Shown here: positions 1-49,282 of the stretch, piece by piece
Layout of the letters: each line of letters begins with the position of its first letter
How positions within the stretch are numbered: position 1 is the first letter of the stretch
DNA from: Trichoplax adhaerens
Taxonomy: Eukaryota; Animalia; Placozoa
DNA: 64,000 nt
Assembly: GCF_000150275.1 (NCBI RefSeq)
Contig: NW_002060943.1
Span: 10,758,209 to 10,822,208 of the forward strand
Reading direction: 5' to 3'
Program-made: the position numbers and the translations under genes
Notes under the pieces: generated by a model
Seen by the model: the letters and a program-made list of their open reading frames with translations, nothing else
What the model was told of the DNA's origin: nothing
Database searches by the model: none

Positions 1-72
1 AAAGTCTTTTAGAAAATTTCATTTGACTAAGACAGTTCTTTGCGTGATACTTTAATTACAATAGACTATCTG

Positions 73-122
73 NNNNNNNNNNNNNNNNNNNNNNNNNNNN
101 NNNNNNNNNNNNNNNNNNNNNN
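73..122. other. Assembly gap (50 N)
   Basis: Run of n characters. Confidence 0.99.
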
Positions 123-159
123 AACGTTTATCGCAACTGCTGGAAAAGATAAATTGATT

Positions 160-226
160 ATCATTTTGCAAAGTGCCCGGGCAGTTTGCAAAATGACCGA
201 CTTCGCATACGGTCACGTTCATATAT
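160..226 (+). repeat. End of a dispersed palindrome-array element (CATTTTGCAAAATG type)
   Basis: tcattttgcaaagtgcccgggcagtttgcaaaatgaccgacttcgcatacggtcacgttcatatat is nearly identical to 26106-26172. Confidence 0.75.
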
Positions 227-4257: not shown

Positions 4258-7200
4258 ATGAAGCTTAATTTTACCATATTTCTTTTACTTCATATGAGCA
4301 TTGATAGCTGCTGTAAAAGTGATAAAATTGACTTGTATCTTGGTGGATTTTTTCCCATCGACAACTTTGAATGGAATGCTAGTGGTCTCCTACCAGTATC
4401 TCAAATGGCAATCGACGATATTAATTCTAGAGATGATATATTACCTAATTATCGTCTGAATTTAATTGTTCGAGATACCAAGGTAAATTTATGAACTAAA
4501 ATTAGTTTAAAAATGATCCTACCGTTTTGCTTTAAAGTTTGCATCATCGTCACTACTTGGTTCTAAATACTTAAATAATATAAGAAAGTTCATGTTATAG
4601 CAAATTTTTGCCATTGATATCAACTCCTTTATATCATTTATTTCTTCGTAAAGGCTGTGGCTACGTTAGGTGTTAAAATCTTATTCGATTTCATCCAGCT
4701 GCCGCCAACGAAAATAATGCTTTTAGGCTCTGGTTTTACTCGTGTTACATCCGCAATAGCTGGAGTAGCAAAATATTTCAACTTAATTCAGGTTGGTTTT
4801 CGTCAAATATACGAAACTTTCACAATAATATTCGATTTATGCGTTAAGACTTATCTTCTGATATAATTGTATTGAACATTAGTAATAACTAGTGAGCATT
4901 AAGCATCATTTATCAATATCTTTTTTAGTCAAACTAAGGCAATATTAAGATCCTCACAAAGTAGGTAGTTTAATCTTAGAGTCCTTTTGATAATCGTTGG
5001 GAGAGAGTCAAAAAATCTTAGCTTTATCCAATTTGTACTTTACTATTCAGTTTTCTGTTTAATATTTCAAAATTAAATATTGCATTATTAATTTAATAAA
5101 CAAGTTCAGATTCGAGATATTATCATAACCATCAGCTTCTTATTGCCGAAACAATCTTTAATTGACACTTATTTCGTCAAACAATCCTAGCAAGTCTTCT
5201 GTTCTCTTAATTACTAACGCTTGAAAATTACACGCCCTCTTTTCTTCAGAACCATTTCATTAATACCATAGATGGAAATGCACCATATTATGTCCAAGTA
5301 ATTTCATTTACCTGGTATTTATTATACTTTGAAATATTATGACCGAAAGCGCTAAAAATATCGTAACTTGATAACATCTCCTCAATAGATTAATAGTTGT
5401 GCATATTTCGTAATTAATCCGTGGCATTTACAACAGTTTAGTACTCTATTTGTTAGGTAGAAATTAATTTCCAAGGAAGTAATATTGCATAAACACATTG
5501 GTATTCATTTTTTACTAAAATATTTGGTCATTGGACAACTATTTACAGCATCAACTTGCAAGATTGATAAAATACGCAATACGCTAGAAGCTAGTGAATT
5601 TGGCTCTAGTTTCACTCACACATATTTTGTGGATCGAGACTATTTTTGGGCATATAGTAATTAGCAATAATTAAATCTAATCCAGAAATGCAGTATAACT
5701 AATTAGTAGGATAATCGATCATTGCCACGTACAGTACTAATTATTGCATAGGTAGCAAACAATATTAGAATCTGTCTTAACTTGTGTTGATAAAAATTTA
5801 CCACTTTTGAAAATCCTAACGTAATCTCTTCATAATAATATACAATAAAATACGATTATAATTTGATATCATCTAGAGATAGATTTGGTGTTTACATCAG
5901 AATTTAGTACGGTATGTTAATTCGGTCAATTAGAGCTATTATGTTTAGAGAACGTGTCCTTAAATTGTGAAAATAAATAAGAAATCTAATTTTGCCTGTC
6001 TTGATCATTACTGATCTTAAGAGTTAAGGTAAAAATAGATTAAGGGGATACAGTTACCTAGCACTTTTAGATCCTGTTACCGATAGTAATAGTCATATCA
6101 TCTGCTTTAATGATCAGTCGATTTACAACAGGCGCAGCGACTGGTATTTAACCTACCACATCATTTGCATTACATTAATAAATTAACAAATTTATTCTCG
6201 TGCCATATAAATGATTTAGGAATACTGTATGTCATGATTTAAAATGCAAAACTGATTGCATTAGTACAGTGATACTGTTTGGCTAATCTATACTCATATA
6301 AATTTTTACGGTATTTAAAAAGAAACGAACTATCAGTATATAGGTATAGAAGTCGTTAACTTTAATGAGTGAGGACAGGATGATTATACCTCACGGCGTA
6401 GTAATATCGAGATAAATTCCATTCGATTATCACATATGAATATTAAGTTCTTTCAATCTAGCAACTTATTCATTCCCGTACAAACAATTTTAAATCGCAA
6501 CATTTCATGAGAATAAACCCGCATCCAAATAAGTTCCTACCTTACACACGATTCGATCAAGATAAAATGATCTAAATATGAAAGAATTTATATAGCTACT
6601 TAGTAAATTTAAAATGTAGCTTCTCTGAACTATTTATATTTTATTACGGAAGGAGATACAGGGCTGATTTCTGCTGAAAAAGAGTATACAATAGGATCTC
6701 AAATGAATCTTCGGATATCACATTTCTTATATGCAGAATACGATTTTGCTCATATTTAAATTGAATAGCTAAATTGTAATAGCTCTAACATTAAACATAA
6801 TCTGCAAGCATACACACAATTGATTCTCTAATCGCCAATAGCGGAAGTCTGCATCCACCTGTAATGTAACTTAGTATTGATTGTAGACTGTTAGCCATGT
6901 GTAGTATAATGTACGGTAGATATTTATCCTAAGAGATATTTGGTAGCTGTAACTATAGACTGTAGCGGTAGAGACTCTATGCTAGAGTACAGATGACTAT
7001 ATACAGTAAGCTGTTGAGTTACTAATATGGCTATAGGTAAAAATAGAACTGTAAATCATATATTAGGATATGGTTAATTCATTGTACTTTGGCTGGTGTG
7101 AATAATGTCTACGTAAGTACTGTAGTCGTATCCATATTGGATTAATGATGGTCCGCAGTAGAATAGTCTTACTAAGAATAATTTAACTATGTGTAAAATA

Positions 7201-10200
7201 AGGTAAAAGGTTGTCATGCGGATTGTAGCTGCGAATGCTACGGAAAGTATAAAAGCATGCAACTTTAGATTATTCTGTTAGTTCGTTGTAGAAGTCTTTA
7301 GAAGTAGTATTCGGCTAGAGTAGAGCTGTGTAGTTAATCTTTGTATAAGATTCAATAAAGCCCTTATTTTTCTAAAATTTGGAATTTCGTGATTGGTATA
7401 TATCACACCACCCTTAACTTTGAAATTAAATAACATACGCGTAAATCAGTTACGGTACGGCACGTTAATTAATATTGCCTTTCATCTTTGATATCATACT
7501 GTCTGAAAGTAGTATTATTCATGAATTAAAGCTACCGGTAGGGTTTACACATATTTTATTCTTTTGAATATACCGTAGAATTTTAAAATACTTTGTCCCA
7601 GCTATCGAAGAACCGGCCATATTTGACTGTTCACTGCAATCTTACGCCTTACATATTGCAGTATTCGCGGCATGGAAGAATGCGAGATAATATACGTCAG
7701 ATTACAGCAATTGACTACCGTAGTAGCTTCCGCTCGGTCATGAATCGATTTTTCTACAAATTATGGCGGTATTCGATGCTATAATTTTAATCAAAGAATG
7801 TCAAATACGGTACTGTGTTAGTTAGAGCTTTCCTTTCAAGTACCGTAACATAAATTAATGTCGATCGAGGGATATCTCATCCGTAATTAACAGAGGTGTT
7901 TGTATTAAAATCTTAACTAAAAATACCCATATATGTATTCAAGATCGGCATTTCGGATTAATTTAAAATAACGAATATGTGCGTATTCTAATTATTTACG
8001 TTAATGCACGTATGTGGGAAAATCGTATATAAGCAATATTGATGTCAAGTAATTATAAAAATAATCCACCATGTTTATCAGCAAAGAATCTTATAAATGT
8101 TATTATTACATGATTGCCGAATACGATCTAGATTAACCAGGACATTTGATTGCTGAGAGTTTAAAATGAACGAATACTTTTATTTAGAAAGTCTATTCCC
8201 ACACCTCTTGTCACAACTTGCCAGCAGCGACAAAAAATTTCGATTTATGAAATTCATTAATAAGTTTTAAGGGCCGGCAATGATTCTAGTACAATAGAAG
8301 ATCGCTTACTCGAAGTAAATGCGTAGACGTATATGCCTATAATTTATAGATTTCTGATTTAACACAATTGTATCATCGCAATCAAAGAGGTTCAATTTGC
8401 TTACCCTAGCTGACGAGATTTATTAATTTATTTGATGATAAGCCATTTACTAATTTATTACCGGTAACCTGTTAATTAGTCAATCATAAGCAAAGGTTAT
8501 AACTAATTCCCTATCTTGTATTTGTTCATATTAGACAACATACTCTTCCGAGGGTGTCTTACTGTCTGATAAAAGTAAATATCCATTTGTGTTCCGAACA
8601 TGCTTTTCCATTAATGCTTGGAGTTTACCTCAGATAATACTACTCAAGCATTTTAATTGGACGAGAGTAGCCACGCTGACCAGAAGAAGCGATCTATACG
8701 ATGCAGTAAATCTCGTTTTGTTTATTGATATTCTTAAAAAATGTAAAACATGGTATTACTAATTATGTTAGCCATTTTTCTTCAATAATTGTATTTTATA
8801 AACTAAAGAAATATCTTCTTTAATTTAATGCAGTTTATCTGTAGTAATAGAAAATTCACACTGTCCAAGCAAGTTATAGCTTTATGTTTTAAGCTAATCA
8901 CTAATTTTTGTACACTACTGGTACTACTGGTATTTAATACCTTGCTATAATTTTTAGAGTACGGAGAGATTATTAAGTGAACTCCATCGAGCAAAAATTG
9001 AAGTAATTGCCGAAGAAGGACTTATCACTGGCACTAATTCCAGTCGCCAGATTAAAATCTTAAAGGTCGGTAATAATTATAGTACTTGATTTAAATAGCT
9101 ATTACGATGAAAGAAAGTCATTCAGCTAGAATAATATACCAGATTGACTCTTTTACACAATAACAGCATTAAGCTAGATTGTGAGATATTTCTACCTAGT
9201 AATGTAAATAAAGCACTTCTTAGCTTTCCTTATCGCGAGCTGAACACGACAAGTAGAAAAAATTAGAAAACATAAAAAACGTCGTCTGATGTAGAAATTT
9301 GTCATGTACTCATACTTTTACAATAATACGGGTATACGCGTATGCTCTATCCGCCTTGGCCAAAGTTGGTTTACCTATTTTAATAGGCCGACATTACGCC
9401 AAAATACATCCTTAATATAGATACAGATCGCGTCAAATTAATACTATAGTTGAGGTTTTCTATATCTGTATCTTGAAACGTCGTGAATTGCATTTAAAAG
9501 GCAAGAGTAAGTAGCACAAAAGACAGCATTTTTGTATCAAATCTTCGAGTGTTTTCCATTAGGAATATCAATATTTTTTCTCGCGTCCATTTTAATCCAT
9601 GTATTACATTGTTAACATCCTCTAGAGATAGCAGCAATAAAATTCGTAATCATAGCAAGTAGTGTAGATAAATTCATAAGTATCGTACTGTATAAGAAAG
9701 ATATCTAAAGTATGATATAAGGTGTAAATGTTCTTATACGTTAAAATTTATGATTTTCAGTTAAGGTGGCTTTAATGATTATTGAGACTAGCTTTTAGTA
9801 CCAGTATGGCTATAGCATTGTTACGGTGTTGCCTTGTCATTAGGATAGTTTAATAAGTACAGTAGTAGCTAGTATGGAGAATATCCATATTTGTAGTGCT
9901 AGGTAAGATAAGTAATGCCTTAACGTGGATGTTGTTTGTTATAGTTCATTACATACTTGATGTTGATTGTTATTGTGTGACAGATAGCAGTAAGATGATT
10001 CAAGTTTTAGTTGATGATAGTTGAATTAGACAACCTACGAGCTTAGATTAAGATTAATTATGAGTAAGAGATTCAAAATATTTACTGATAGAAAAGCTAT
10101 GTAAGGAACATCTCAGTTCGAGATGTTTCTCCTAGTAAGATATAATAATAATACTGTTGTTGTTTACAAATTAGACGGTTCCTATATAAACGGGAACATT

Positions 10201-13200
10201 TGAGTTGAGTGGTGTGGTAAAAAGATGTAGATGTATCTTTGCTAATAAAAGTTTTATCTTTACAGTCTTTTACTATGTGTGTTTAACGTTAAGTAAACGG
10301 GCGTTTAAGTCAGTAGCTACTTATAGACTTTTACTGTACGTTACCTTGTCGCAGAAGTGAAATTGTGACAAGCATTCACAAATAGAAGTTTTTAAGATCG
10401 TTATTCACATTATAAACAATTTTATTTATTGTATAATTAGGTCAGGACAATTTTTAAGTAATATAGTTTTCATTCGGTAGCTTGAGCAAATACATTATCT
10501 AAGATGTAATTCAATAAACACCCGGACTACTGTATAGTAATAATAAATATTAACTTAAAAATAATAAATATATTTGGCTTAATATGTAATTATGATAGAT
10601 TTATACACAATCAGTTTAGCTTGGAACGATTCTTTGCTAAAAGCTTCTTCATTATACTGAAATAATAATGTACATCATGAGGAATATGGATGTAGAAAAC
10701 AAAAATTTTGCAGTTAATCTTTCTTCGTAATTGATTGCTCTATTGAATTAAAATTAAACCAAAACTTGCTTTAAAGCATGTAGTGAACCTATTTTCTCGC
10801 ATATCATAACAGAAAAGTGACGCCCGGATAATTATAGCGTATCTACAAGAAGAAGACGCCATTGAGGTATTTTGCCAGGTTGGTCAAGTAGGCATAGTTA
10901 ATTTTGTTATAAGGTTAATCATTGCTCAGATACAAAGTATATCAATGTTATTAGTCTACTATCCTGCAACCTAGAGATTGCAACTGCTTGTTCGAGGCGA
11001 GCTGATTCTATGATTTATACGAGCGAGTTATGCACTAGTAGATTTTCAAATTTAAAGAGAAATTGACCATTTATATATCCAAGATATCAAAATATTGTTA
11101 ATTAATCTTTCCTAAAATAGATGCTAGCATAAGCTCTAAGATTTACAGCATATTTAAATGATAAATACATCCTAGTACTTTAGATTATACTGTTTTACAT
11201 TTGTTTCATCAATCGGTCTAATACATTTCTATCATTCTATGATATATTTGAAAAGATGTAGTCAATAATTTCAATTGAATCATCTTTCGCATATATAGGC
11301 TTATAAACATCAAATGTACGGACCGAATTATGTTTGGATCATACCTAATTATTTTTCTAATACATTTTGGAGCAAAGCAACAAAGTTCAAATATGTTGAC
11401 TGCACCCCGGAAGAAATTGCGATATCGGCAAATTATTCCTTATCAATAAGCTTCGCTGCAATAAATGTCGTTACAAATAAAACCATATCTGGAATGGTAA
11501 ATTTAAAAAATTTTTAATTAAAGCTGTTAATAATATTACCTGATGTTACAGTCAATAAGTCAAGTCCCTGAACTATATAAAGGGGAACAATGTCTGCGAT
11601 ACGGGGAACACATCTCCGCTAATGATCAACACGCAGACTTAGAGGTCTCGTATTTTTAACTAAACACTAGTGCAAACTCCCGTCGCTTTGCTGACGGTTT
11701 ACGATAATGTGCTCATTTAACAGATAGTATTACCATTTGATAGACCTGTCAGAGGTTCAATAACTTTATACCGTAGTTAGTAATATTAACTTTGCAGCCT
11801 TCCAATAAGTCAAAGGCTAATTTTACTTGCTGCTACCTGATGAAGATAATAGTATTTGCGAATACAGATACCTAGAGACTGTCACAATTTCAACTCTACG
11901 ACAAGGAAACGTACAGTAAAAGTCTGTAAATAACTACCGACTTTAATGCCCTTTTACCAAACGTTAAGCATACTCAGCGAAGCACCGTAAAGATAGAACT
12001 TTTATTAGCGTAGATAATGTACATCTACAACATTTCACCACACAACTCAACTCAAATGCTCCCATTTATATAGAAACTATCTAATTTGTAAACTACAGTA
12101 TTATTATTATACCTTACTAGGAGAGACATCTGGAACTGAGATGTTCCTTACATAGCTTTTCTATCAGTAAAATTTTTAATCTCTTACTCATACTTAATCT
12201 TAATCTAAGTATGTATGTTATCTAATTAAGCTATCAATAGCTAGAACTTGAATCATCCTACTATGATCTATGAATAGGAACAATCAATATCAAATATGTA
12301 ATAAAATATCAACAAATGATATCCACGTTAAGACCTTACTTATCTTACCTATTACTTCAAATATGGATAGTTTCTATATTAGTTACTACTGTACTTATTA
12401 AACTATCCTAACTGTAAGGTAACACCGCAACAGAGACTTATACAAGATAGCCAGGTTAAAATAAGTTATTATCACGGAATATTCACGTGATAATCTACTA
12501 GTATAATTTATCATAAGTCAGTTATAATCACGATGATTCAGGCTGTAAGTAGATTATTCTTAACTCCCTTATTTAACCATTAATTTCGGTATGTATGTTA
12601 CGGCCATTCTTAAGACTGATGTTGTCCTTAAGGTCAGTCACGGTCTTTGCTAAGACATTAATCATTCCTAAGAATGGCCGACCAATCCTAGGAATGATCG
12701 GCAATTCCTAAATTATTTCCACTCTAATCTCTATATTGCAATTTTATAACACTGTACCAGCTAAATTTTATATTACGGAATATGTAAAGTCTCGCATTTT
12801 GTCTGTATAATTATAATGAAAAAATTTATCCTTGAGATTACGATAGAACTCACTCATGATAATTATTAAATTACGTATTATTATCACGCATTACTTGATT
12901 CAATACTACAAATAAACACTGTTACATTATTACTTGACGATTTATAAATTACTACTAACCGACTGTTTATCTTACGAATTTAGACGCCGAATAACTTTAA
13001 CATTCGCTATAATAACTGGCCAACTATCGTTAATCAAACCTATTATCCCAATAGTTATGCTGCTTTTGCTTACGATTCTATTTGGGCGGAAGCGATGGCT
13101 ATGAATAACTCAATTAAACGATTAGCCGAGCTTAACCGGACGTTAGAAGATTTTCACTACGGCGATAGAGAGATGTCACGAATACTTAAGGAAGAGATGT

Positions 13201-16200
13201 ATAACCTCAATTTTTCGGGAATAAGTGTAAGCTACTACTGTAGATGTTCAATCAGCCTCTAAAAGAAGTACACGTATGTAAAGTGTACGATATTAGTTAA
13301 ACTGCCTGTTAGTCCACGTTGAAATATGCGTATGTTTACTTTACTTAAATCTAAAATTTTAAACGTTTTTATTATATTATATTGCAAATATGAAAATGTG
13401 GCTGCTATTAAATTAACTTAATTATCAGTAGAGTCACATTATTATATACCAAAAATCTAAGTTAGCCAGAATTCTTTGCCAATGCAATTATAATCAATAT
13501 AACTAAAGCTATATTCTCAATCTAGATCGTTACAATACTTCATAGATTAGACGATAATTTATAATTAGTAAATATCGAATTTATACTCTTACATACAGTA
13601 TTTGAGAGATTTGAATGACTGTAATGAGAATTGTGCTACTGGTAATACGTATGAATAGCAATATATCATTAAGTTAGTGTTATGGAATACAACTATAATA
13701 TATGAAAGATTAATATTAGACTATTACGGTGTAAAGTGATATATCGCAAGAATATATTTGATTAGCTTGAATTTAGAAATAACAAAAATTTATGTAGTAT
13801 AAATACTACCAAAGTGTATATTAAATTATTACCGATGTTTTCTCATTTCACATTTCATAGTTAAAATAAGCTAAAGTATCGTTTTTGTATCTCTTAAGAT
13901 TAGCAGACTGCCTTCAATATGCAGCTATAGGAATACATTAGACTAATTTGAGGACATTTGTCGATCAAAGAATTAACCGCATAATTAAATATAACGCTAT
14001 GATTCATTATTTGCATAGTTTATTAACCCATAATTATACCAATTTATTTGTATACTGCTTTATGGCTTGGATAAAATAATGGTAACATTTCTGCTGACAG
14101 AATATAGTCCAATTTGATACATTTGGCGATGTTCATCCACATGTTACATATCTAGTTCAATATCAAGGTTTGTTAGTTCTAGGTTAATTTTAAAATGAAT
14201 CTATTACGATTTAATAGATATAGCAATGATTGTTTACTTTTTATTGCTTTTACTTTGAAACATGCAACAGACATTTTATCTATGAGATATTATTATCCGT
14301 TCTTTAAATTTCTTACAAATAGGTAACGTCAAAAGAACAGTTGCTACTATTTTGCCTAAAGAGAAACGCGTCGATTTCTTTACTACACCTCCGAATGTTA
14401 TAAGATGGGCAGGTTGAACACGATTTTTGACCTTAATGAGAATTATACTAGTCTTATGAAAATGTTAATATAATTAAACTTTTCTAGTACTGTAATACGT
14501 TATTAAGTTTATTGGTGAATAATAACAACTTTCTAATTGATATAGGTGCTGGACCCCCAGTAGATCGTATTAAATTAAAACAAGTTGATACAAGGCTTCC
14601 ACTACATGTTTTTATCATTATGGCCGCTCTATCATGTTTAGCCATAATTTTGACTATAGTTTTTATGATTTACAACAATAAATACAGAAACGCCAGGTGA
14701 TAATAATGTACTTTACTCGTTTCGAATAACACTGACAGCACGATGCAGTGCTTAAAAGCAAGATTTAATTAGCTTTAGAAACAGCATATTCATGTTAAAA
14801 TATGTCTAGTTGTACTTAATTGAAAGTAGCTGTAAGATAAAACAAACACGTAGTCACAAATAGTAATGTAGAATTAAGATATCTATAAATTTTACTATAG
14901 TAAATTAATTGAAGTATGTTTGAAGAAATAAAAGAATTTAATTAATACGGTACCTAAATATGTAATATAGAAGATCTAGAGTAAACAGCTCGTAATCTAC
15001 CTTTAATCAATTATCATCTTCACGTATACGTAAAATAACTGACAGAATATTATTTTGGAATTTTGATACAAAAAAGCCAAGAAATTTTCTGCTTATATAA
15101 GACTTTATTCTGTCATACTTTTAGAGTTATTAAAATGTCCAGCCCCAACTTGAATAATTGCATTTTAATCGGATGCATTCTATTGTACAGTTCAAACATT
15201 ATAAGTGGAACCATTAGTATTATATCATCCGCAACTTTATGTATGGTAAGTAATATAATACTTATTAGAAATATCCGTAGTAATTAGTGTTACGACTTCC
15301 AAATTTTGTAACAAGTACTAGATCTGCACTCAGCAAGGAGACCCAGTATTAAGTTGAAGAACTAACTTTATTGTTAAATAAAGAGTTTATATACTTTCTT
15401 TATTGTGACCTTTGATCTACTGACGTAGATCACAAGATCATCACTAACAGAAAGGTTTCCATAGTTTAGACATTACAAATAGAATATCATGCCAAGTATG
15501 GCAACGTGAGAATACATATATAGATAACCTTAATATAGTACCATAACTACATCTATATACGCATGACGTGATAACATCGTGATATTTAACTATATATAGA
15601 AAGAAGGTAACATACTAATTATGTAACTATTACAGAACGTGATATTAGCAAATTAATATCAAAATTATTCAAGCGTATAGTAAACACAATTTTCAATCAA
15701 TTATTATTATAAAAGGACGCAAACTCATTATACTACTGTATGTACGAGTATAATAGGGAAAATGGGGGTCTGCCAATGTTGCAATATAAGTTAGAACCTT
15801 AAATATATCACCAAAAGCACCTATGTGTATAAATACCGCATCATTAATTAACAGTATGTAGCAATAGACTAGTTTTAATGAATTTCTAATAATACACATA
15901 TTCATTAAAACTTATGCCTGCATATCACTTATTTGAGTGGTAAAATATAGCACTTTAGACTCTTTAATGAATATTTTTCAGATTTCATACATTTAATGAA
16001 CATATTTGTATACGATACGTCTTTGAGTAGTCATTTACATTATAAATTTATTTGTAACGAATGACTTAATTGTTATACTGTACCATCGAAAAAGTTAGCA
16101 CCATGGTTAACAATAATAGGATTTGCTACAGTATCTGGTTCTATGTTTGCTAAGACCTATCGAGCTTATAAAATTTTGACAAGCAGAAAAAGAATTAATG

Positions 16201-17261
16201 TAAGTGCTTTTGTAAATTTATTGTATATTTGTATTTTACTGGATCCATTCCTTTATGCAGATAGAAATAAAAATCTAGTTTATTCTATATATTAAATATA
16301 TAAGTATATATTAATATTGATTTCTTCTGTATATGCATAATCTAACGAAACGCCAAACTATTGAAATCGGATAGCCTATACATGATTATCATCTATATGG
16401 TATAGTAACAGTATTAATTCTTATGGAAACAATGGTATTAACGACGTGGACAGTAATGGATCCAATGAAGCCAGAGTATAGAATCTTACCTAGACAGGTA
16501 TTGTAATAAGTAAACTTTAGTATCTACGTGTGTAATTAAAAAGGAAACTAATAATTACGTTGCAGCAGTTAGACTTTTTACCTTGATAAATACACGTATA
16601 ATTATAAATGTTATATGTACTTGATTTTCTTCGGTACTAGTACTAGTTTTAAACATCTTAAATATATTATTAACTTTTTTCTAGACTTCTCCAAACAACA
16701 GCTTTATAATTTTAGTTCCAAGACTACTAGAATGTTCGTGCAAAAATTTTGTCATATGGCTGGCTATAATTTTAACTTTAAATGCATTCGTGTTAATTTT
16801 TGGCGCATTTCTAGCTTATGAAGCAAGAAATATTAAATTATCTGTTATGAATGAATCGAAACAAATTGCTCTTTGTATTTATAATGTTGCACTTTTATGT
16901 ATTATTGTCATTCCAATCTCATTTTTCTTACCAAATACATCTGGAGAAACATATATTGCATCGAGTGGATTAATACTCTATTGTACAACAACGACAACAT
17001 GTATTTTCTTCATCCCAAAGGTATTGACAGTATTTCTGATATACCATAATCTTATTTATGTTGGTAATAGCTCTATAGCGACTATGCGCAATATTTTACT
17101 GCCTACTTCAATAATGATTAGGATACTATTTAATATTCGTATCTATTAACTTTGAATTTATCAATTTATTACAGATTAAGTATAAACATGATGTCGTTTA
17201 TCCTAATGGGCGATTTTTCTCTGTTGGAGACAAAAGCACAAATACAAAGATCGACTCGTGA
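4258..17261 (+). CDS. GABA-B receptor-like class C GPCR, paralog 1 (signal peptide, Venus flytrap, 7TM; ~740 aa)
   Basis: GT-AG exons in continuous frame: 4258-4482, 4654-4791, 8535-8705, 8958-9065, 10813-10878, 11299-11496, 12984-13226, 14101-14167, 14323-14412, 14546-14696, 15125-15245, 16095-16199, 16375-16497, 16685-17020, 17175-17261. Motifs: LYLGGFFP, AIDDIN..DILPNYRL, YPFVFRT, AYDSIWA, IKMSSPNLN, FAKTYR, FGAFLAYEARN, NESKQIALCIYN, FFIPK. The last exon is least certain. Confidence 0.92.
6860..7407 (+). mobile_element. Solo LTR, family A (548 bp), in intron 2 of GPCR1
   Basis: TGTAATG...TATCACA ends, perfect 5-bp TSD CCACC (6855-6859/7408-7412), TATAAAA ~7248 then AATAAA ~7354. Near-identical inverted copy at 24015-24566. 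Confidence 0.9.
9819..10370 (+). mobile_element. Solo LTR, family B (552 bp), in intron 4 of GPCR1
   Basis: TGTTACG...TTGTGACA ends, perfect TSD AGCAT (9814-9818/10371-10375), TATATAAA ~10183 and AATAAA ~10244. Diverged inverted copy at 11880-12432. Confidence 0.88.
11667..11724 (-). mobile_element. Helitron-type 3' terminus (possibly a minimal element)
   Basis: Minus strand reads ...CCGTCagcaaagcGACGG-gagtttgca-CTAG|T: a GC-rich hairpin ~9 nt before a CTAG end followed by T. About 55 bp are shared with 25226-25279. Confidence 0.65.
11880..12432 (-). mobile_element. Solo LTR, family B (553 bp), in intron 6 of GPCR1
   Basis: TGTCACA...GCAACA on the + strand, perfect TSD GAGAC (11875-11879/12433-12437). 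Reverse complement of 9819-10370; the empty site is visible in the other R copies. Confidence 0.9.
12601..12712. repeat. Palindrome array (CATTCCTAGGAATG type)
   Basis: cggccattcttaag...cattcctaagaatggccg...caatcctaggaatgatcggcaattccta. Confidence 0.55.
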
Positions 17262-31300: not shown

Positions 31301-32833
31301 TACTCAATTTCAAGTTGTTACGGAACATTACAGCTAGAATTTTTATAATTTCCTTAAATTTATATACCTGGATAGATAATACCATGGCTAAACAGTATTG
31401 GATTCTCCTTAGCAGCAGGGTCACTATTTGCTAAAACGTATAGAGCTTACAAAGTTTTAACGACTAGATTTCGAATAACTTCGGTAAGATACGTATATCT
31501 ACGGTAAATATCGAAGCTGTCGCTGTGATAAGTAACTTCTATTACTTATCCATTATAATTATTACTTGTAGCCATTAAAAGATTCTCATCTACTTGCAAT
31601 TGTCCTGATATTAATGGCAATTGAAGCTATTCTACTAACCTTTTGGACAGCAATCGATCCATTAAAGGCGGAAAAAATGGCAGCTCCGCCAATCGTAAGT
31701 TTATTTATTCACTTTTATATCGTATCATTCGTATGTAAACTGTATGTAATAAGTTACGCATAAATATAGTTAACTAGACTACTACTCATTCTTATTTGAA
31801 TCATAATACTTTCTTGTAATAATTCTTATTCTATAAATCAATGCTAGTCTGATCCTAATCGATACAAATATAAAATTGTACATACTTACTGGGTATGTAC
31901 ATGCAATTATGGCGTTTATTGGCTTATCGCTACACTCATCCTGAACGGCATAGTGTTACTATTTGGGGCTTTTTTAGCTTACGAATCAAGAAAAATTAAA
32001 CTCTCAGAGCTGAATGATTCTAAACAGATTGCTCTCTGTATATATAACATAACAATTTTGTGCATTATTATTATACCGATATCGTTTGTTATACCCAACA
32101 GTCATGGCGAAGTTTACGCCGCTATTGGTTGTCTAATATTGTATTGCACAACCATGTCATTATTTACCTTTTTCTTCCCTAAGGTACGACTAAGTTTTGT
32201 TATAAATACCTGTACTTATTAAAAAAACTACGATTTATATTTAAGTGTCAAGCAGATGATATGCACTTTCTAATATTGGTATAAATATGACATTATGTTT
32301 ACCTAGATGAAGGGCAATGCTAAACCTTCTAGTATTCGATTTAGAATGAATGAAAATGCTTCAAGTAGGATGGCTAGCGAAAAATACGAAAGCGCTATGG
32401 GAAACTCAGAATTAATGTTATCTTGCAGGTAGACAAATTAAATTTTTTCATTTATATTCTAATAGTGAATATAAAAGAGGGTGCGAGGAAAATAAGGCAC
32501 GAATCGTACGATAGTAGAAGCATTTAGGATGTACTTTTTACTAATCGCCTCGAAATAAAATACATCAAACTTGAAAATCGTTTTAATTAATTAATGCTGA
32601 TCGTTGTGATATTAAATTTCATAACTTCTCTCTGCACCCCCCCCCCAAAAATATGTGAGAACATTCTGGTTTTATTTTAAAATTAAAACAGTTTATTCGT
32701 CACTAGCTTCGAATGAAATAATGCCACTACCATCCCAATTATCTCAAATATGTGTTAAGTAGGGCTGCTTTTAACTGTCTTATATTCATGTAGGTACAAG
32801 GAAGGCAATGGCAAACGGCAAACTGCTGTATAA
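22306..32833 (+). CDS. GABA-B receptor-like class C GPCR, paralog 2 (~770-785 aa)
   Basis: Exons 22306-22584, 26207-26344, 27284-27454, 27619-27726, 28528-28593, 29533-29730, 29915-30151, 30291-30357, 30427-30513, 30603-30753, 30973-31096, 31376-31483, 31572-31694, 31848-32183, 32307-32428, then either read-through stop at 32432 or last exon 32794-32833. Same phases as paralog 1. Motifs: AYDAIWA, IRISSPNLN, FAKTYR, NDSKQIALCIYN, FFFPK. Confidence 0.92.
24015..24566 (-). mobile_element. Solo LTR, family A (552 bp), in intron 1 of GPCR2
   Basis: Reverse complement of 6860-7407 with roughly 15 differences counted by eye. Perfect TSD GTTGG (24010-24014/24567-24571). Confidence 0.9.
25226..25279 (-). 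mobile_element. Helitron-type 3' terminus, second copy
   Basis: Same hairpin + CTAG|T end as 11667-11720, with one mismatch in the loop. 5' end not located. Confidence 0.65.
26020..26172 (+). repeat. Palindrome-array element (CATTTTGCAAAATG type) ending in CGTTCATATATA
   Basis: Repeated cattttg(c/t)aaaatg units; the last ~67 bp match 160-226. Ends 34 nt upstream of GPCR2 exon 2. Confidence 0.75.
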
Positions 32834-35062: not shown

Positions 35063-38000
35063 ATGATACAACAAATATTGTTAAACTTGATGTTATTTCT
35101 CATCATCGGCTTAATATTTCATCCTGGTAATGGTGAACATTATACGCACGAAAATGAATTCAATATGGAACAACATAATAAAGGAGATTTATACATTGGA
35201 GGACTCTTTCCTGTGCATTCTATTGGTTGGGATGCCAGTGGTGTTATACCTGCCGTTGAAATGGCTCTGGAAGACATAAATAATCGATCGGATATCCTAG
35301 CGGGCTACAAGCTTAAATTACTATGGAAAGATACTCAGGTAAAGTATTTCCTTCAAGCAGTCTCGAATTTTCAACTCTATTTTAAAACATTTCGTCGAGT
35401 AGAAGCCACTGCATAGAAGAACATTACGACTGAATTACACAAACTGGTTTCTTGTGCCATGTATATTTTCGCTGACAGTGATTGTGGTTTGACATACGGT
35501 ACTATTGAGGAAATGTCGAAATTAAAACTTTTTCAGAGTTCTTTTACGGAAACAAAGTTGAAAACTTGATAGCGTTTACTAGCACCGCAGACACCCTTTG
35601 TTCTCAATTTTTTTCATAATTTACGGTAACTCGTATGAAAAATTTTAAAGTCCATGCAATATGATATCGTTTATGATTCTATTTTTGTCATTCAAATCAA
35701 ATAAAATATTGCAGTCGTCCATATACAATTTGATCTATCTGGATTTTGCCGTGCGACAAGATTTAGCTAGTATACTATAGCGTTGAGACATTGATGGTAA
35801 TCTACTGCATAGTGATAGAGATAATCCATTGGAATTTATTTTGTACCAACGGCTTTTGCTCGTTTAAGGAGAGATTATAATTACCAGACTTTCTATTATA
35901 ATAACGACGGCCATTCGTCGAGATTAATTCACTTTCTATTTAAGCAGACGTCATCTATGTTTTTTAGGGCAAGAATCACGTAGGTTTATCGGCATACTAC
36001 GACATTCTTCGTAAGCCTCCAACCAAAGTTACAATCTTGGGGCCTGGATTTACGAATATAGCCACAATGACGGCGGAGAATTCCCATTTTTATAATTTAG
36101 TGCAGGTAACATGATAAATAAAGTAAGATAGGTGACCGTGATACAGATTATTATTATTATAGGATCACGTACGGTGCTCTAACCTTGTCTTTAAAGATAT
36201 TCAGCCTGTAAAATTATTTTCTCGAATTATTTCGTTGCATATCGGCTGGTATTTCTTAACGTTATGACGATAAAAAATTTCTAGTGGTAGTTTGGATATT
36301 TAATGCTTACGGCTTAAATTTCACCATTTTGCGGCTGTAAAGATTAAAATATCATTGTATAGCTAGCAATCGTTATTACCATAGTTGATTTTATTTTTCC
36401 TATAAGATTAGAATAGATTCGATTGGATAATGGCCGGATCACTATAGTTTTTATTAATTCTGTAATATTAATTAAAATACATTCACTATTCCACATGCTC
36501 TGACTACTATCAATTAGTTGTAAAATAACCGGGTGAAAATTTCATAAACCGTTAGTGAAAGTGCTACTTTGCTGAAAATGGATTAGTGTCTCAGCGAATT
36601 TTTATTACCAACACGGTGATTGATGAAATTTTGCCCGAAGCAATCATATCAGCCCTGATGCCACTGAATGTAGTAATATTTTTAGTTTTCTTATATAAAC
36701 TGTTTATATTACCAAGTTTTCCTAAGACTATGTTGACTACGTCATTCAATTTGATCAGGCAGAAAATTACGAAAGATGAAATATTGGAACTTGCAATTTT
36801 ATTATCGCTGATATTTACCTTCATTTTGCGGTTTAAACTGGTAGATAAATATTGTGATGTATTGCAGTCTTCAATTTCGTTCTTAATTAACCAATTTTAT
36901 TTTACTGCCTGTATAATACCTGACGATTTGTCTTATAACGCTAATAGAAGACTCTTGCTCTTTCCATCTTGCTTAAATACCAGAAAGAAAATAATCCCTT
37001 GTAACTGTATTCATACCATACGTAAATGTAGATTTTATCCTTCGTTTCTATCTAGGCTTACTTTGTTCATTTTTGATCGGTTCTAATTCCTCCAAATAGT
37101 AACTGTTGAGAGTTCTAATTTCGTCACCCATTTTAAAGATTTAGTTGCCAATAGATCAATACTGTACTGTGTCGCGCTTTTTATTTTCTGATTATAATTA
37201 AACACACTCCTGCACCTGATTAATTGACTTTATTGCGTATCAAACCTACGTAATATTGTTAATAGTGATCTTTATTCTTCATCTTGTTTTTACCAAATCG
37301 TTGAGGGGAGTACTACGTTAAGAAATAGTATAAAATGTTCTATGTTACAACAACATTTTTGTTCAGTAAATATCTCAAAAATAAATGCTTTACAGTAATA
37401 TTCGAAGCAGATTTTATTAATATCATCAAACAGTCGATAACCCTTGAATGAAATGTTTCCCTATCTGTTCACTTAGAACGAAGAAAAGCAAAAATGAGAA
37501 ATTACTTCATCATCATTAGTAAATTTAATGCTTTATTTCAAGTTTGCGTGTTTAATTAACATCATAATTGTCATTTTCTTCTCGCAGGTATCCTACTCAG
37601 CAGAGGGTGCTCGTTTATCAGACAGAAATCTCTTTCCTACGTTTTTTCGTACCTGCTATAATCCGAGTTCATTCAGTTCACAATTAGTAACCATATTACT
37701 TCATTTCAACTGGACTGAAGTTGGCCTTCTTTATGCGAATAGTGACGATTTTAGCCATGTAAGTCGGCTTTAAAAGTAATAATAACAAGATCTACATCTT
37801 TTTCTCCTTGTGGTCATTTCAAGACGAATACCGCATAGTTGATAAACAAAATCGATTTGTTAATTATCACTATTCATCATAGTCGGTAAATTCATTAAAG
37901 AAGAGCTTCTCTCAAGCTGGTATCAAAATTGCTATTGCTGAAGACTTTGCTGCCGGTTCATCTATGGAACGAGAAGTTACTCGGATTAAGGTATATCGTA

Positions 38001-41000
38001 AATAATGCTTAAAGTTTTAAATCATTTGATTGTTTTCTTAACCAGATTAAAGTTTAAGAAATGCATAGAATAGCCATTTGATTCATGTATAAATTAGATT
38101 ATTCTCATCATAAGGAATCAAAAGTAAATATCATTATCGGTTTATTCCATGTTGAAGATTCATGGAAGGTATTTTGCCAGGTAGGAAAGATTTATATCCA
38201 TTAGAATCTCTGTATTAGTAAGTCATTCAGTTAATCCATCATTGCTGCTATCAAAACAACCAATTTTAATTTGCTAAATGGATAAATAGAGGTCGCGTAT
38301 TTTAATTTAAACAGATGACATTAATCTACTTGTAACTTTGTATATGTTACAGTTTTTAATTTCTATGATAAACGATTGAATTAGGCTTTTACGTTACAGA
38401 TCTGCGTGATTGCACGAGAGACAGAAATTTTAACTAATAAAGATAGCCATAAACACAGCAACTTCTAATTAAAATAAAATTTAATCCGTCTTTGTTTTAA
38501 TTATTAATTGTATCAGCCAACCAGCATGGTAATTAGCTTTTTAATTGGCAATCTATACTTATAGAAGAGATAAAATTTTAAGTAGGATGTAAGTTTGTCT
38601 ACCAGCACAGGACCTTTAGTTTTAAATAAGTTTTAATTGGAATATAACTTTGCATTTTTGCCTATATCGATCAACGTTTTAAATTCGGATTTACGTTGGT
38701 AATCTACGTAATGATAGAAGAAATAGTACTTTTATTTAGCAAATGAATTAACGAATATGATACTTTTCATTAAAAAAGATTTAATATAGCGAAATGAAAC
38801 TTTATATTGTTACTGGTCTGATTTTAACCATATCGACCAACACTTTGAATTAGGCTTTTAAGTTAGCCATTTATGGATACGATTACGCTTGGATTATTCC
38901 TAGTTGGCTGTCTAAAGAATTTTGGATAAAGTCTAACAACATCCAAGGTGTAAATTGCACCTATGACCAAATACTACAAGCATCACAATATTCCCTTGCC
39001 ATTGATCATTCAAAGAGCAATGTACTAAATAGATCGACAGTATCGGGCATGGTATATATTTCATAATTTTTTTACCAATCTAGTAGATAAAATGAGATCA
39101 TCAGATTAAGAGTTTAATTATATATCTGATTATTTCATTTCTAGTAGAGATTTATCCTTTCTTGTGTTCATGCTATTTCTTTACATATTCATTCCTTAGA
39201 GTAGATTTAAATATGAAGTTGGTTTCTGATAAAGCAATCAAAGTTTTGGTTATATAATATTAATTATAATTTTATGGTAATATATGCAGACTCCATTAAT
39301 GTTTCGGCGACGATACCAAGAGCGACTTCAAACTAATAATTACACTTGCCGAATAAATCCTTATGCTGGGTTTGGTTACGATGCTGTGTGGGCAGTTGCA
39401 CTAGCTTTAGATAATTCCATTCAAGAATTAAAAATGTACAACAAGACTTTAACTGACTTTAGTTATAACGATTCAGAGATGGGTGGCATAATTTTACATC
39501 AAATGGGGCTAATCGAGTTTGAAGGAGTAACAGTAAGAAAGTGCTTTCTAACTAACTAAATATTTTAATGGAAGAATAAGCCAGCTTAGCTTATATTTTT
39601 TAACCTTATTAATGTTAAAGTGCAACTTTATTCATATTATTATGATATTTTGGTACCTCAATTTAGAATTATATTAAGTTTGATAAGTTTGGAAATGTTC
39701 AGCCACGTAAGACCTATTTAAAGCAGTTACAAGGTATCTTTAATAAGCTTTCAACAATGAATTTTATTAAGCTTAGTCAGGAATGAGTTTGGTATTAAAG
39801 AAAATTATTACAGTAGGTGACACTATCATAACGATGCTATTTCTAATTAAATATTCTTATTCTTCATACTTGTAGGTGGAGAATTACAAATTGTCGGCAT
39901 TATTTTAGCTAATTCTAACCGAATTAGCTATCAGAGTCCCCAAGTATCTCCGTTGATATGGCCAGGTAACATGCCGAAGACTATTAATACGATGCCTAAT
40001 GTCTTCACTCAATTTTTTCATACAGATTTAGTAACTATCTTATATTAACTTACGCTTTTGGTTTGTCTTATATTATCATTTGATGATATTGGGATGAAAT
40101 AGTATTTCTACTGTAGTAACTATATTTTTCTCTACTACTATATTCACCTTAAAATTATTGATCTTTTCGTTTACTTTACTCTACGGTACTCTTTGATGTT
40201 ATATGGAAGAAATACAGTACTATAACTAATATACCTGGTAATTTTATGATTTTTCTCCGTTAACTGAACAACTACCTTGAGATTATAAGGCTCTTCATTT
40301 TATCATTTGCTACTATAAGTTAAAATAAGATCAATACGCTTTGAATAGAATAGAGTTTGGTTTCCCTTGTCTTTAGTCACTACTCTTAAATTTTCTAATC
40401 TTCATTTATCTAATTTAGATGACCACACTCCGGTTGCAAAATATCGTTTTGTCCTCATCAATATTGGAATTTCCCCAATACAGTTTTATTTTATGACAGT
40501 CTTAGCGGTAACTGGTATTTTACTCTCCACGACATTAATTATGTGTAATTTCAAATTTAGGCAGGAAAGGTAACTAAAAATTGATGAATACTCGTGCAGC
40601 CCAGGCCGCAGCATAAGATTTGTTTCTTAAAAACGTTTGCAATCTCAGTATATCAGTTACTAATTATAGCAGTTTCTATATAATAACAATTGTAGCTCTC
40701 TGGTTACCTAGCTTATTAAATTTTTAATGTTATTAGTGTAATAAGGTACAGTTCTACATTAAATTAACTCTATAGCACAATGATGTAATATTAAAAGGTC
40801 TTTAAACTTTCAACTGAACAATAAATAATGGAATTATTTATGTGATTGAATTAAGCACATATAACGTTACTAAGTTCTTAAGTATTATGTACGCGTATAC
40901 TAGCACAATTTAGTGATCATAATATTAATAAATTTGATAAATAGCTAACGATAAACATTGATATTTGTTCGTCGTAGTTTTTATCCCATCGAGAATAAAT

Positions 41001-42551
41001 AATAAATTTTAGTCAACAACTATTACAATGTTAGAAGAAAATCTCTCAGCTTATAATCTTGGTCTAATTAATTTTACTTAACTTACAATATAATTTAATT
41101 TCAATTGTTACAGAAATGTCAAAATGTCAAGTCCGAAGTTAAATTATCTTGTTCTACTTGGTTGTATAATTTTATACATTGCTGTTATCGTCATGGGTAT
41201 TGATGGAAAAGATTGGATTACCAAACTTTGCATGGTTTGCTAGAATGAATCTCGTATCAAAATGGATTGTCCAGAGTTTTTAGTTACCAATGTTGGTTTA
41301 GGTGCTTCAATTCTAATATTTACTTTTTCTATTGAAATTCTTAGCTAACTCCGTGGTTTATATGCGTGGGTTTTACTTTAGCTGCTGGTGCACTCTTCAC
41401 CAAGACTTATCGAGTATACAGGCTGTTGACAGCAAAGACTAAACTTCGAGCTGTAAGCATTGCTAGAATTTTTTCGTTCTTTAAGCTGAAAAAGGTAGAC
41501 TAGAATTCCTTTATAACTGCTTCAAATTATAATATACACAACTATAGCCAATTCGAGACCACCATTTATACGCCATCATTTTCATTCTGTTGGTCATTGA
41601 AGCTGGTATATTAACTGCTTGGACAGTAGTTGACCCGTTGCATTCAGAGATAGCTTATAAAGTTTTAGATGTAAGAAATTGATCTCAGATGCATCATTAT
41701 TTTTACGATGTATTTTTGTTATGAATATCCTTTGAAACTTCTAATAATGGATTTCGTATCAATCAATAAATTAGATACCAATAGCAGAAAGAGGCACACG
41801 TTATTGTGGATATTATTTTCAATGCAATTGTAAATATAAAACATATTGGTTTGTTACAACTATATCTCTCAATGCCGTTATACTTTTGTTTGGTGCTTTC
41901 TTGGCATACGAGACAAGGAATATCAAGATCACTTCAATGAACGATTCAAAAGAAATTGCTATATGTATTTATAACATTATACTTTTGTGTGGTGTGGCCA
42001 TTGCGGTTTACATAACGACGCCAAAACATAGTGGCATCACCTATGGAATATCTGGAGGACTAATTTTATATTGTACTACTTCTTCGCTGTGCATTCTTTT
42101 CGTTCCTAAAGTAAGTGTCCTAACTTTAATGCTGAGAAACTCCGTACAATTATGCCTAAAAGCATATCTCGCATAGTCTATGTCTTCACTTAAAAAAATC
42201 TCATTTATGATTCAATCGTTTTTAGATTGTGAGAAATTGTAAGTTAATCAAGCGTCGTCGACCAAGTTGCAGTACTGAAGCTAGTTGTAATACGAGTGTA
42301 ATGTTATCATACGACACATTTCAAGAGGTTAGTAGACAAATTTCTGAATCGTTCAGTAGGACTGCTTACAAAGGTATCTAATGACCTAAACTTGATAATA
42401 AATAGTTTTATTATTTTTTGGCGAATTCATTTAACAGAAAGAGAATGAAATTAGAAAACTCAAGCAAGAAGTTGATCGATTGCAATCTACACTACAAGTA
42501 CTGAACTGTACAGATACCAAAAAATACGACAGGAGTGATCCTTCTGAGTAG
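35063..42551 (+). CDS. GABA-B receptor-like class C GPCR, paralog 3 (~800 aa, C-terminal coiled coil)
   Basis: Exons 35063-35338, 35968-36105, 37588-37758, 37883-37990, 38115-38180, 38854-39051, 39290-39532, 39667-39733, 39876-39965, 40419-40569, 41114-41234, 41345-41452, 41548-41670, 41775-42110, 42226-42327, 42438-42551. Motifs: LYIGGLFP, FPTFFRT, GYDAVWAVALAL, VKMSSPKLN, FGAFLAYETRN, NDSKEIAICIYN, LFVPK; tail FQEKENEIRKLKQEVDRLQSTL. Confidence 0.93.

Positions 42552-43220: not shown

Positions 43221-49282
<6,062 letters not shown>

What the first reader, a model, noticed from the sequence alone, without database searches (positions are those of the whole stretch)
4258..42551. Tandem trio of GABA-B-like receptors with a rewired ligand pocket: candidate orphan chemosensory/transmitter receptor family
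Seen: three intact-looking paralogs with identical exon phases but highly divergent Venus flytrap domains. Against recalled human GABA-B1b pocket residues: W65 is kept in all three; S130 is T/S/T; S153 is E/V/E (YSSEG, FASVS, YSAEG vs YGSSS); H170 is C in all (FRTC); Y250 is Q/H/H; W278 is Y/W/W; E349 is Y in all. The amine-binding residues are lost, and in paralogs 1 and 3 an acid sits where GABA's carboxylate normally binds Ser. Inference: these are not GABA receptors; paralogs 1 and 3 may prefer a cationic/amine ligand and paralog 2 something else.
Basis: partly seen in the sequence, partly recalled or inferred. Interest (0 to 1): 0.82.

Follow-up and report, generated by a model that had tools for sequence, protein, structure and literature searches.

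The report
Placozoan GABA-B-like orphan receptor array
Three intact neighbouring Trichoplax genes encode GABA-B-like receptors that have lost most GABA-contact residues, but they belong to a six-gene array within an already published expansion of about 37 such orphan receptors, so the finding is real and mostly known.

Summary
The window is Trichoplax adhaerens scaffold DNA. It carries three intact 15-exon class C GPCR genes: P1 4258-17261, P2 22306-32432 and P3 35063-42381. All splice sites are GT..AG, and the intron phases are identical.

- W65 is kept.
- S130 is T/S/T, S153 is E/V/E and H170 is C.
- Y250 is Q/H/H, W278 is Y/W/W and E349 is Y.
- The C103-C129 disulfide is also lost.

The trio is the downstream half of a six-gene tandem array. 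Recurrent gene conversion has shaped the array, and dN/dS of 0.05-0.25 shows purifying selection. The six genes form one placozoan clade that is neither GB1 nor GB2.

"Not canonical GABA receptors" is therefore supported. The family is already published: Nikitin et al. 2023 list 37 GABA-B-like receptors in Trichoplax with one GB1 ortholog. Nearly every non-GB1 member has a rewired pocket. The cationic-ligand idea remains untested.

New here are corrected gene models and a clade-specific cleft signature: Cys170 with an acidic residue at 153 or 131. The scan had already noted this array upstream (s1-790526) and another GABA-B-like copy elsewhere (s1-781612).

The parts
4258..17261 (+). P1, GABA-B-like class C GPCR gene, 15 exons, about 742 aa (TRIADDRAFT_52579 locus)
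   Evidence: Splice model. P0151 (TRIADDRAFT_52579) matches most exons at 100% but skips exon 3 and adds spurious exons. Pfam.
22306..32432 (+). P2, GABA-B-like class C GPCR gene, 15 exons, about 772 aa
   Evidence: Splice model. P0002 (RDD36458.1, Trichoplax sp. H2, partial) matches exons 2-15. Pfam 7tm_3 151.6 bits and ANF_receptor 129.1 bits.
35063..42381 (+). P3, GABA-B-like class C GPCR gene, 15 exons, about 783 aa
   Evidence: Splice model. Its N-terminal part is fused to the P2 7TM part in the published model TriadITZ_001282.
8535..8705 (+). P1 exon 3: flytrap lobe 1 exon holding positions 150-154 (YSSEG, Glu153) and 170 (FRTC, Cys170)
   Evidence: This exon is missing from the public model P0151.
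27284..27454 (+). P2 exon 3: FASVS (Val153) and FRTC (Cys170)
37588..37758 (+). P3 exon 3: YSAEG (Glu153) and FRTC (Cys170)
4654..4791 (+). P1 exon 2: positions 129-131 (Phe-Thr-Arg in place of Cys-Ser-Ser); the homologous exons are P2 26207-26344 and P3 35968-36105
10813..11496 (+). P1 exons 5 and 6 with their intron: position 250 (Gln) and position 278 (Tyr); the conserved disulfide Cys pair is retained
12984..13226 (+). P1 exon 7: position 349 (Tyr)
16685..17020 (+). P1 exon 14: TM5-TM7; the homologous exons are P2 31848-32183 and P3 41775-42110
   Evidence: Pfam 7tm_3 64.8 bits. PDB: GABBR2 75.9 bits, GABBR1 62.7, GPR156 30.8.
12877..15287 (+). Gene-conversion tract shared with upstream paralog U3, 98-99% identical including introns; 90-96% identity continues to about 17327
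   Evidence: blastn. dS is about 0.04 in exons 9-14 against about 0.37 in exons 1-8.

Best explanation
P1, P2 and P3 are working genes for orphan GABA-B-type class C GPCRs. Each has a Venus flytrap domain joined directly to a 7TM domain, with no cysteine-rich domain and only a short tail. They are the last three members of a six-gene head-to-tail array in Trichoplax adhaerens. The array grew by tandem duplication and is partly homogenised by gene conversion. Together with one or two dispersed relatives it forms a placozoan-specific clade inside the published lineage-specific expansion of GABA-B-like receptors. Inferred: like other class C receptors they act as dimers, a small ligand closes the flytrap cleft, and the 7TM domain activates a G protein. 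The cleft no longer has the GABA site, so the ligand is something other than GABA bound in the canonical pose. Its identity is unknown.
For: - Identity: the genome is 105.6 Mb in 1414 contigs and the window is on the 13.26-Mb contig. P0151 (TRIADDRAFT_52579) matches P1 exons at 100%.
- Intactness.
- Architecture: ANF_receptor plus 7tm_3.
- GABA-B family: the near-full-length P2 ortholog scores 277 bits to GABBR2 and 250 bits to GABBR1, against about 65 bits to mGluRs.
- Six-gene array.
- Clade: SH-aLRT 100, outside both the GB1 and GB2 clades. With only the TM5-7 exon, the array plus a gene on C1411 at 3.119 Mb group at 96.
- Purifying selection: dN/dS is 0.05-0.25 in both domains wherever dS is not saturated.
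- Pocket: S153, H170, Y250 and E349 are replaced and C103/C129 are lost.
- GB1 residue roles: PMC6429233 and 10.1101/621060. The second paper treats a charged residue at 153 or loss of C103/C129 as abolishing GABA binding.
- The family is published: PMC10133484.
Against:
- No ligand, dimer partner or G protein was tested.
- W65, a hydroxyl residue at 130 (T/S/T) and an aromatic residue at 278 are kept. Tyr at 349 and a non-His at 170 are also seen in Nematostella receptors proposed to bind GABA, so an altered GABA or omega-amino-acid site is not excluded.
- The full-length tree is unrooted and used a short search.
Confidence: 0.72

Rival explanations
1. One reading: the acidic cleft (Glu153 in P1 and P3) makes these receptors sensors of a cationic or amine ligand, and P2 senses something else.
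For: Glu153 is fixed in five of the six array genes. P2 has Glu131 in the same lobe-1 patch, so all six keep an acidic residue there. In GB1, positions 130 and 153 hold the ligand's carboxylate (PMC6429233), so an acid there would repel a carboxylate. Pocket-vicinity positions differ between the young pair U3 and P1 slightly more often than other positions (6/15 against 52/287, one-sided Fisher p = 0.047). That position list was chosen after the fact.
Against: P1 and the three upstream genes carry Arg131 next to Glu153, which may form a salt bridge and cancel the charge. No structure or docking could be run on a correct model. Because P2 has Glu131, the proposed split between P1/P3 and P2 is not clear-cut. 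Charge arguments for flytrap pockets are often wrong without a structure.
Confidence: 0.15
2. Ligand-free partner subunits: like GB2, their flytrap binds nothing, and they serve as signalling or trafficking partners in heterodimers with other GABA-B-like paralogs, for example the single GB1 ortholog.
For: The best pairwise PDB hits are GABBR2 for single exons and marginally for the whole protein (277 against 250 bits). NCBI names the H2 orthologs 'GABA type B receptor subunit 2'. The canonical ligand residues and one lobe-1 disulfide are lost.
Against: In the full-length tree they lie across a 100-supported split from the clades holding vertebrate-type GB2. The flytrap alone scores the same to GB1 and GB2 (152.9 against 149.1 bits). 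Their tails are 28-51 aa, too short for the GB1/GB2 coiled coil seen. W65 and an aromatic residue at 278 are kept, unlike GB2's Gly at 65. Six or more diverging copies are unusual for a pure partner subunit.
Confidence: 0.1
3. They still sense GABA or a close omega-amino acid in an altered binding mode.
For: Trichoplax responds behaviourally to GABA (PMC10133484). Nematostella homologs with Tyr at 349 and no His170 were proposed to bind GABA and baclofen. W65, Ser/Thr130 and an aromatic residue at 278 are kept in P1-P3.
Against: S153 is Glu or Val, Y250 is Gln or His, G151 is Ser or Ala, and C103/C129 are missing. The same Nematostella study used such changes to predict no GABA binding. Trichoplax has a separate GB1 ortholog.
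Confidence: 0.06
4. They are unexpressed or decaying gene copies.
For: Public gene models are fragmentary or chimeric.
Against: All 45 exons are open and all 42 introns are GT..AG with conserved phases. dN/dS is well below 1 among the P1-like copies. The H2 strain keeps near-identical orthologs.
Confidence: 0.03

Closest known systems
Trichoplax 'GABA-B receptor-like' expansion (Nikitin, Romanova, Moroz et al. 2023, Front Neurosci, PMC10133484)
   Same: Same organism and same family: 37 GABA-B-like receptors in seven placozoan clades, only one GB1 ortholog, and a proposed role in amino-acid or nutrient sensing. Their Table S1 entry 'like 10' (TriadITZ_001282) is the P2 7TM part fused to the P3 N-terminus, and 'like 9' is a partial copy of upstream paralog U1.
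   Different: Their set lacks the pocket exon of all six array genes (FRTC search) and lacks the TM5-7 exon of P1, U2, U3 and P3. They gave no pocket analysis of this clade. This report supplies full exon models and the six-gene array.
Human GABA-B receptor subunits GB1 (GABBR1) and GB2 (GABBR2), PDB 4MS3, 6UO8, 7C7Q and others
   Same: Flytrap domain joined directly to a class C 7TM domain. These are the best solved relatives (250-277 bits against about 65 for mGluRs). The FxPK end of TM7 and GB2-like TM3 and TM6 motifs can be read in the sequence. One conserved flytrap disulfide is retained.
   Different: Not orthologs of either subunit. Four of the seven GABA contacts are replaced non-conservatively. 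The C103-C129 disulfide, present in both GB1 and GB2, is lost. There is no long coiled-coil tail.
Nematostella GABA-B homologs predicted not to bind GABA (bioRxiv 10.1101/621060)
   Same: Non-bilaterian GABA-B-like paralogs that lack C103/C129 or carry a charged residue at position 153, and have Tyr at 349.
   Different: A different phylum and clade. There the charged residue at 153 is Arg, here it is Glu. Cys170 is fixed in the placozoan clade.
Tandemly arrayed class C chemoreceptor families (vertebrate V2R/OlfC, T1R); comparison from general knowledge, not tested here
   Same: Class C receptors multiplied in tandem arrays with divergent flytrap pockets. In Trichoplax the GABA-B-like genes lie in several such arrays.
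   Different: Those families belong to the mGluR/CaSR branch and have a cysteine-rich domain. A chemosensory role for the placozoan genes has not been shown.

Membership tests
Class C (family 3) GPCR | Periplasmic-binding-protein-type flytrap domain (Pfam ANF_receptor) followed by the 7tm_3 domain | tested here: met
   P2 ortholog P0002: 7tm_3 151.6 bits and ANF_receptor 129.1 bits, both above the curated cut-offs. P0151 (P1) likewise.
GABA-B receptor family (GB1/GB2/GB-like branch of class C) | Closer to GB1/GB2 than to mGluR, CaSR or T1R, with no cysteine-rich domain between flytrap and TM1 | tested here: met
   277 bits to GB2 and 250 bits to GB1, against 65 bits or less to mGluRs. Exons 8-10 join the flytrap to TM1 with no Cys-rich stretch.
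GB1 (GABA-binding subunit) | GABA contact set W65, S130, S153, H170, Y250, W278, E349 (roles in PMC6429233 and 10.1101/621060) | tested here: not met
   P1/P2/P3 read W, T/S/T, E/V/E, C, Q/H/H, Y/W/W, Y. Only the GB1 ortholog P0053 among 58 representatives has the full set.
GB1 and GB2 | Lobe-1 disulfide C103-C129 | tested here: not met
   Position 129 is Phe or Tyr, and position 103 is Ala or a gap in all six array genes. Cys is present in both GB1 (P0053) and GB2 (P0072).
GB1 and GB2 | Long C-terminal tail with the heterodimerising coiled coil | tested here: not met
   The tails after the TM7 PK motif are 28, 41 and 51 aa. The GB1 ortholog's coiled-coil stretch alone spans about 45 aa well after TM7. 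No coiled-coil predictor was run.
GB2 orthologs | Placement inside the GB2 clade in a tree | tested here: not met
   The array clade (support 100) lies on the other side of a 100-supported split from the clades containing vertebrate-type GB2, P0072. The tree is unrooted and used the quick search.
Published placozoan GABA-B-like expansion (PMC10133484) | A Trichoplax gene of the GABA-B-like family, present in or related to the catalogued set | tested here: met
   The P2 TM exon is found verbatim in Table S1 entry TriadITZ_001282, fused to the P3 start. The U1 copy is in TriadITZ_001281.
Functional GPCR with ligand-gated G-protein signalling | Expression, surface delivery and ligand-dependent G-protein activation | not testable with these tools
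   There is only indirect support: open frames, conserved splice sites and dN/dS of 0.05-0.25.

The most novel reading that the evidence does not exclude
The cleft of this placozoan clade may have been rebuilt around a conserved, apparently unpaired Cys170. It sits with an acidic residue (Glu153, or Glu131 in P2) and, in P2 and P3, His250. These side chains replace residues that all touch one small ligand in GB1, and Cys, His and Glu are typical soft-metal ligands. The clade could therefore be a GABA-B-type sensor of a metal cation or of a thiol-reactive small molecule. That ligand class is not known for GABA-B-family flytraps.
Probability: 0.07. Interest if true: 0.65.

Novelty: new member of a known kind. 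Interest (0 to 1): 0.3.

Why it matters
Placozoans have no neurons yet carry the largest known set of GABA-B-like receptors. Their ligands matter for how transmitter and chemosensory signalling arose. This locus adds no new kind of receptor.

It does show that public models and the published catalogue miss or scramble a six-gene array. Correct exon models are given here.

It also defines a clade-specific cleft signature: Cys170, an acidic residue at 153 or 131, Tyr349 and loss of one disulfide. That makes these genes a compact, testable panel for de-orphanisation.

Tried and rejected
1. "These are simply GB2-like ligand-free subunits." This was my first reading, from exon-level PDB hits. The full-length tree and the equal GB1 and GB2 flytrap scores weakened it, and it is kept only as a minor rival.
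2. The word-index search with P0151 returned only 5 proteins, too few for a tree. The representative search with one exon supplied the references.
3. No database protein is a correct full-length model of any of the six genes. P0151 lacks exon 3, P0002 lacks exon 1 and TM1, and P0152 is a U1/U2 chimera. I therefore did not fold any of them. The fold tools also give no residue-level output that could test pocket geometry.
4. Exons were joined only inside local scripts, to count frames and stops and to merge already aligned exon rows for the tree. No joined sequence was printed.
6. Gene-wide positive selection on the flytrap was not seen (omega 0.12-0.23). The high 7TM identity between U3 and P1 is gene conversion, not constraint.
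7. Literature searches for the locus tag and for pocket analyses of placozoan GABA-B-like receptors found nothing specific.
Full report
**What the window is**

The window is AT-rich (about 31% GC). It lies at G000:C1414:10758209-10822208 in a 105.6-Mb, 1414-contig assembly. The database protein P0151 is TRIADDRAFT_52579 / XP_002108270 of Trichoplax adhaerens, seen on a 13,260,704-bp contig. It matches most P1 exons at 100%. The genome is therefore T. adhaerens, as earlier scan notes had said. It is not human DNA.

**Checking the observation**

Stop-to-stop frames and paralog-to-paralog BLAST show three + strand genes with the same exon series. I fixed the splice sites by requiring a GT donor and an AG acceptor of matching phase at homologous positions in all paralogs.

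- P1 runs 4258-17261, P2 22306-32432 and P3 35063-42381, with 15 exons each.
- Exon lengths are nearly identical, and the intron phases are 0,0,0,0,0,0,0,1,1,2,0,0,0,0 in all three.
- There are no internal stops.
- P1's last exon starts at 17175, after a CAG acceptor. The 17172 used came from a tblastn edge.

Pfam finds ANF_receptor on the flytrap exons and 7tm_3 on the membrane exons. Both are above the curated cut-offs on the database models. Identity between P1, P2 and P3 is about 30-45% in flytrap exons and 50-56% in the TM5-7 exon.

Joins were made only inside scripts, for frame counting and for merging aligned exon rows, and nothing joined was printed.

**The pocket**

The representative search with the P1 TM5-7 exon returned P0053. 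P0053 is a true GB1 ortholog: it scores 957 bits to human GB1 and 980 bits to the chains named 'Metabotropic GABA-B receptor subtype 1' in entries 9jr0/9jqx.

At a constant offset of 27 (26 after one indel), its residues are W65, C129, S130, G151, S152-S154, H170, Y250, W278, Y279 and E349. These are the residues named as ligand contacts in PMC6429233 and in the Nematostella study 10.1101/621060.

I aligned 58 representatives of at least 600 aa and added each exon translation as a fragment. The readings for U1/U2/U3/P1/P2/P3 are:

| GB1b position | U1/U2/U3/P1/P2/P3 |
|---|---|
| 65 | W in all (a one-residue indel shifts the column in P1 and P3) |
| 129 | F/F/F/F/Y/F |
| 130 | A/A/S/T/S/T |
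| 131 | R/R/R/R/E/N |
| 151 | S/S/S/S/A/S |
| 153 | E/E/E/E/V/E |
| 170 | C in all |
| 250 | Q/Q/Q/Q/H/H |
| 278 | F/F/F/Y/W/W |
| 349 | Y in all where readable |

Two points are added:

- Both cysteines of the C103-C129 disulfide, present in GB1 and in GB2, are missing.
- P2 carries Glu at 131, so an acidic residue sits in that lobe-1 patch in all six genes. P1 and the three upstream genes also have Arg131 beside Glu153.

**How special is this pocket?**

Among the 58 representatives only P0053 has the full GABA set. Tyr at 349 is common in the orphan members. Cys at 170 occurs only in this clade.

I read the exon-3 homologs of 30 Trichoplax paralogs. Position 153 is S, T, A, I, V, G, Q or E, and position 170 is A, S, T, I, V, R, Y or C.

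- Cys170 is confined to the six array genes plus the gene at C1414 near 6.126 Mb, which is the published 'receptor-like 8'.
- Glu153 also occurs in a gene at C1411 near 3.113 Mb.

A rewired pocket is therefore the normal state of the family. The clade-specific part is Cys170 together with the acidic residue.

**Surroundings: a six-gene array**

The TM5-7 exon has 49 matches in the genome. Six lie on the same strand of C1414, about 10-18 kb apart. P1, P2 and P3 are preceded by U3, U2 and U1, which are 97%, 87% and 76% identical to P1 in that exon.

I fetched the upstream 58 kb. All three upstream genes have the same exon series (only exons 1-14 were placed in U1 and U2), open frames and splice sites. 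U3 has a 209-N assembly gap inside exon 7.

Many other family members also sit in tandem groups: C1402 at 1.13-1.23 Mb, C1406 at 2.13-2.18 Mb, and C1414 at 4.69-4.76 Mb.

**Evolution**

Nei-Gojobori estimates give dN/dS of 0.05-0.25 in both domains wherever dS is not saturated. This is purifying selection, not decay, and there is no gene-wide positive selection on the flytrap.

- Between U3 and P1, dS is about 0.37 over exons 1-8 (per-exon values 0.19-0.66 in exons 1-6) but about 0.04 over exons 9-14.
- blastn shows 98-99% identity, including introns, over P1 12877-15287, and 90-96% onward to about 17327. The 5' half is 74-79% identical. This is gene conversion.
- U1 and U2 share a 674-bp tract at 99.6%.
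- Between U3 and P1, 6 of 15 pocket-vicinity positions differ against 52 of 287 elsewhere (one-sided p = 0.047). This is a weak hint, and the position list was chosen post hoc.

**Placement**

Single exons score higher to human GB2 than to GB1. The near-full-length P2 ortholog scores 277 bits to GB2, 265 to 9jr0_A ('Metabotropic GABA-B receptor subtype 1') and 250 to human GB1. The flytrap-only chains score 152.9 (GB1) against 149.1 (GB2), and mGluRs reach about 65 bits.

In a 64-row, 770-column tree:

- The six genes plus the H2 ortholog form a clade with support 100.
- That clade sits in an unresolved group of orphan GABA-B-like receptors.
- That group shares a 100-supported side with the GB1 clade, apart from the clades that hold vertebrate-type GB2.

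The tree is unrooted and used the quick search, so I claim only that the six genes are neither GB1 nor GB2 orthologs. A 100-column tree of the TM5-7 exon groups the array with the C1411 Glu153 gene (support 96) and, more loosely, with 'receptor-like 8'. The tails after TM7 are 28-51 aa, too short for the GB1/GB2 coiled coil.

**What is already known**

Nikitin et al. 2023 (PMC10133484) report the following:

- 37 GABA-B-like receptors in Trichoplax, in seven clades interleaved with cnidarian and hemichordate ones.
- One GB1 ortholog as the first candidate GABA sensor.
- A proposed role for the rest in amino-acid and nutrient sensing.

NCBI names the H2 orthologs 'GABA type B receptor subunit 2'. 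The orphan family is therefore not new.

The public record of this locus is poor, however:

- P0151 skips the pocket exon and inserts spurious exons.
- P0002 lacks exon 1 and TM1, and P0152 is a U1/U2 chimera.
- In the paper's Table S1, 'like 10' is the P2 7TM part fused to the P3 start, and 'like 9' is a partial U1 fused to an integrase-like tail.
- The pocket exon of all six genes, and the TM exon of P1, U2, U3 and P3, are absent from that table.
- I found no paper that analyses this clade's pocket.

**Mechanism and verdict**

Shown:
- The genes are intact.
- The products have class C GABA-B-type architecture.
- They form a tandem array shaped by gene conversion.
- They are under purifying selection.
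- They have lost the canonical GABA site and one disulfide.

Inferred:
- They act as dimeric receptors.
- The flytrap closes on a non-GABA ligand.
- The 7TM domain couples to a G protein.

It is untested, and Arg131 in four of them complicates it. The ligand-free-partner rival and the altered-GABA-site rival are less likely but not excluded.

The finding is real and correctly read, but it describes further members of a published expansion.

Noticed in passing
U3 has a 209-N assembly gap inside exon 7.
   Followed up: yes
window 12877-17327, and upstream -36336 to -35663: Gene-conversion tracts. P1 and U3 are 98-99% identical including introns over about 2.4 kb and 90-96% further on. U1 and U2 share a 674-bp tract at 99.6%, the one noted earlier as s1-790526.
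   Followed up: yes
window 4258-17261: The public model TRIADDRAFT_52579 (P0151) omits the true exon 3 (8535-8705), uses spurious exons near 5356-5469, 7059-7139 and 11549-11644, and drops part of the TM2 exon. The H2 and TriadITZ models of neighbouring genes are partial or chimeric.
   Followed up: yes
window 31-392 and 26014-26208: A short dispersed repeat. Frames at the window's start and inside P2's 3.6-kb first intron translate to very similar strings, seen only in the frame listing. It is probably a mobile-element fragment.
   Followed up: no
window 43221-44372 (- strand): A 383-aa single-exon open frame just downstream of P3. Its only Pfam hit is a sub-threshold MutL_C match (E 0.063), so its identity is unknown.
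   Followed up: partly
G000:C1411:3113461-3119536 and G000:C1414:6125927-6132917: The two nearest relatives outside the array. One has Glu153 with Ala170. The other, the published 'receptor-like 8', has Gln153 with Cys170. Together with the array they suggest a placozoan subclade of about eight genes.
   Followed up: partly
G000:C1175:3900-4202 (contig of 8338 bp): A copy of the TM5-7 exon 77% identical to P1, close to U1's value of 76%. It may be an allelic or unplaced copy of U1.
   Followed up: no
genome-wide: The TM5-7 exon gives 49 genomic matches at E <= 0.001, against 37 GABA-B-like receptors catalogued in PMC10133484. Some may be other class C genes or duplicate contigs, but the catalogue is probably incomplete.
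   Followed up: partly
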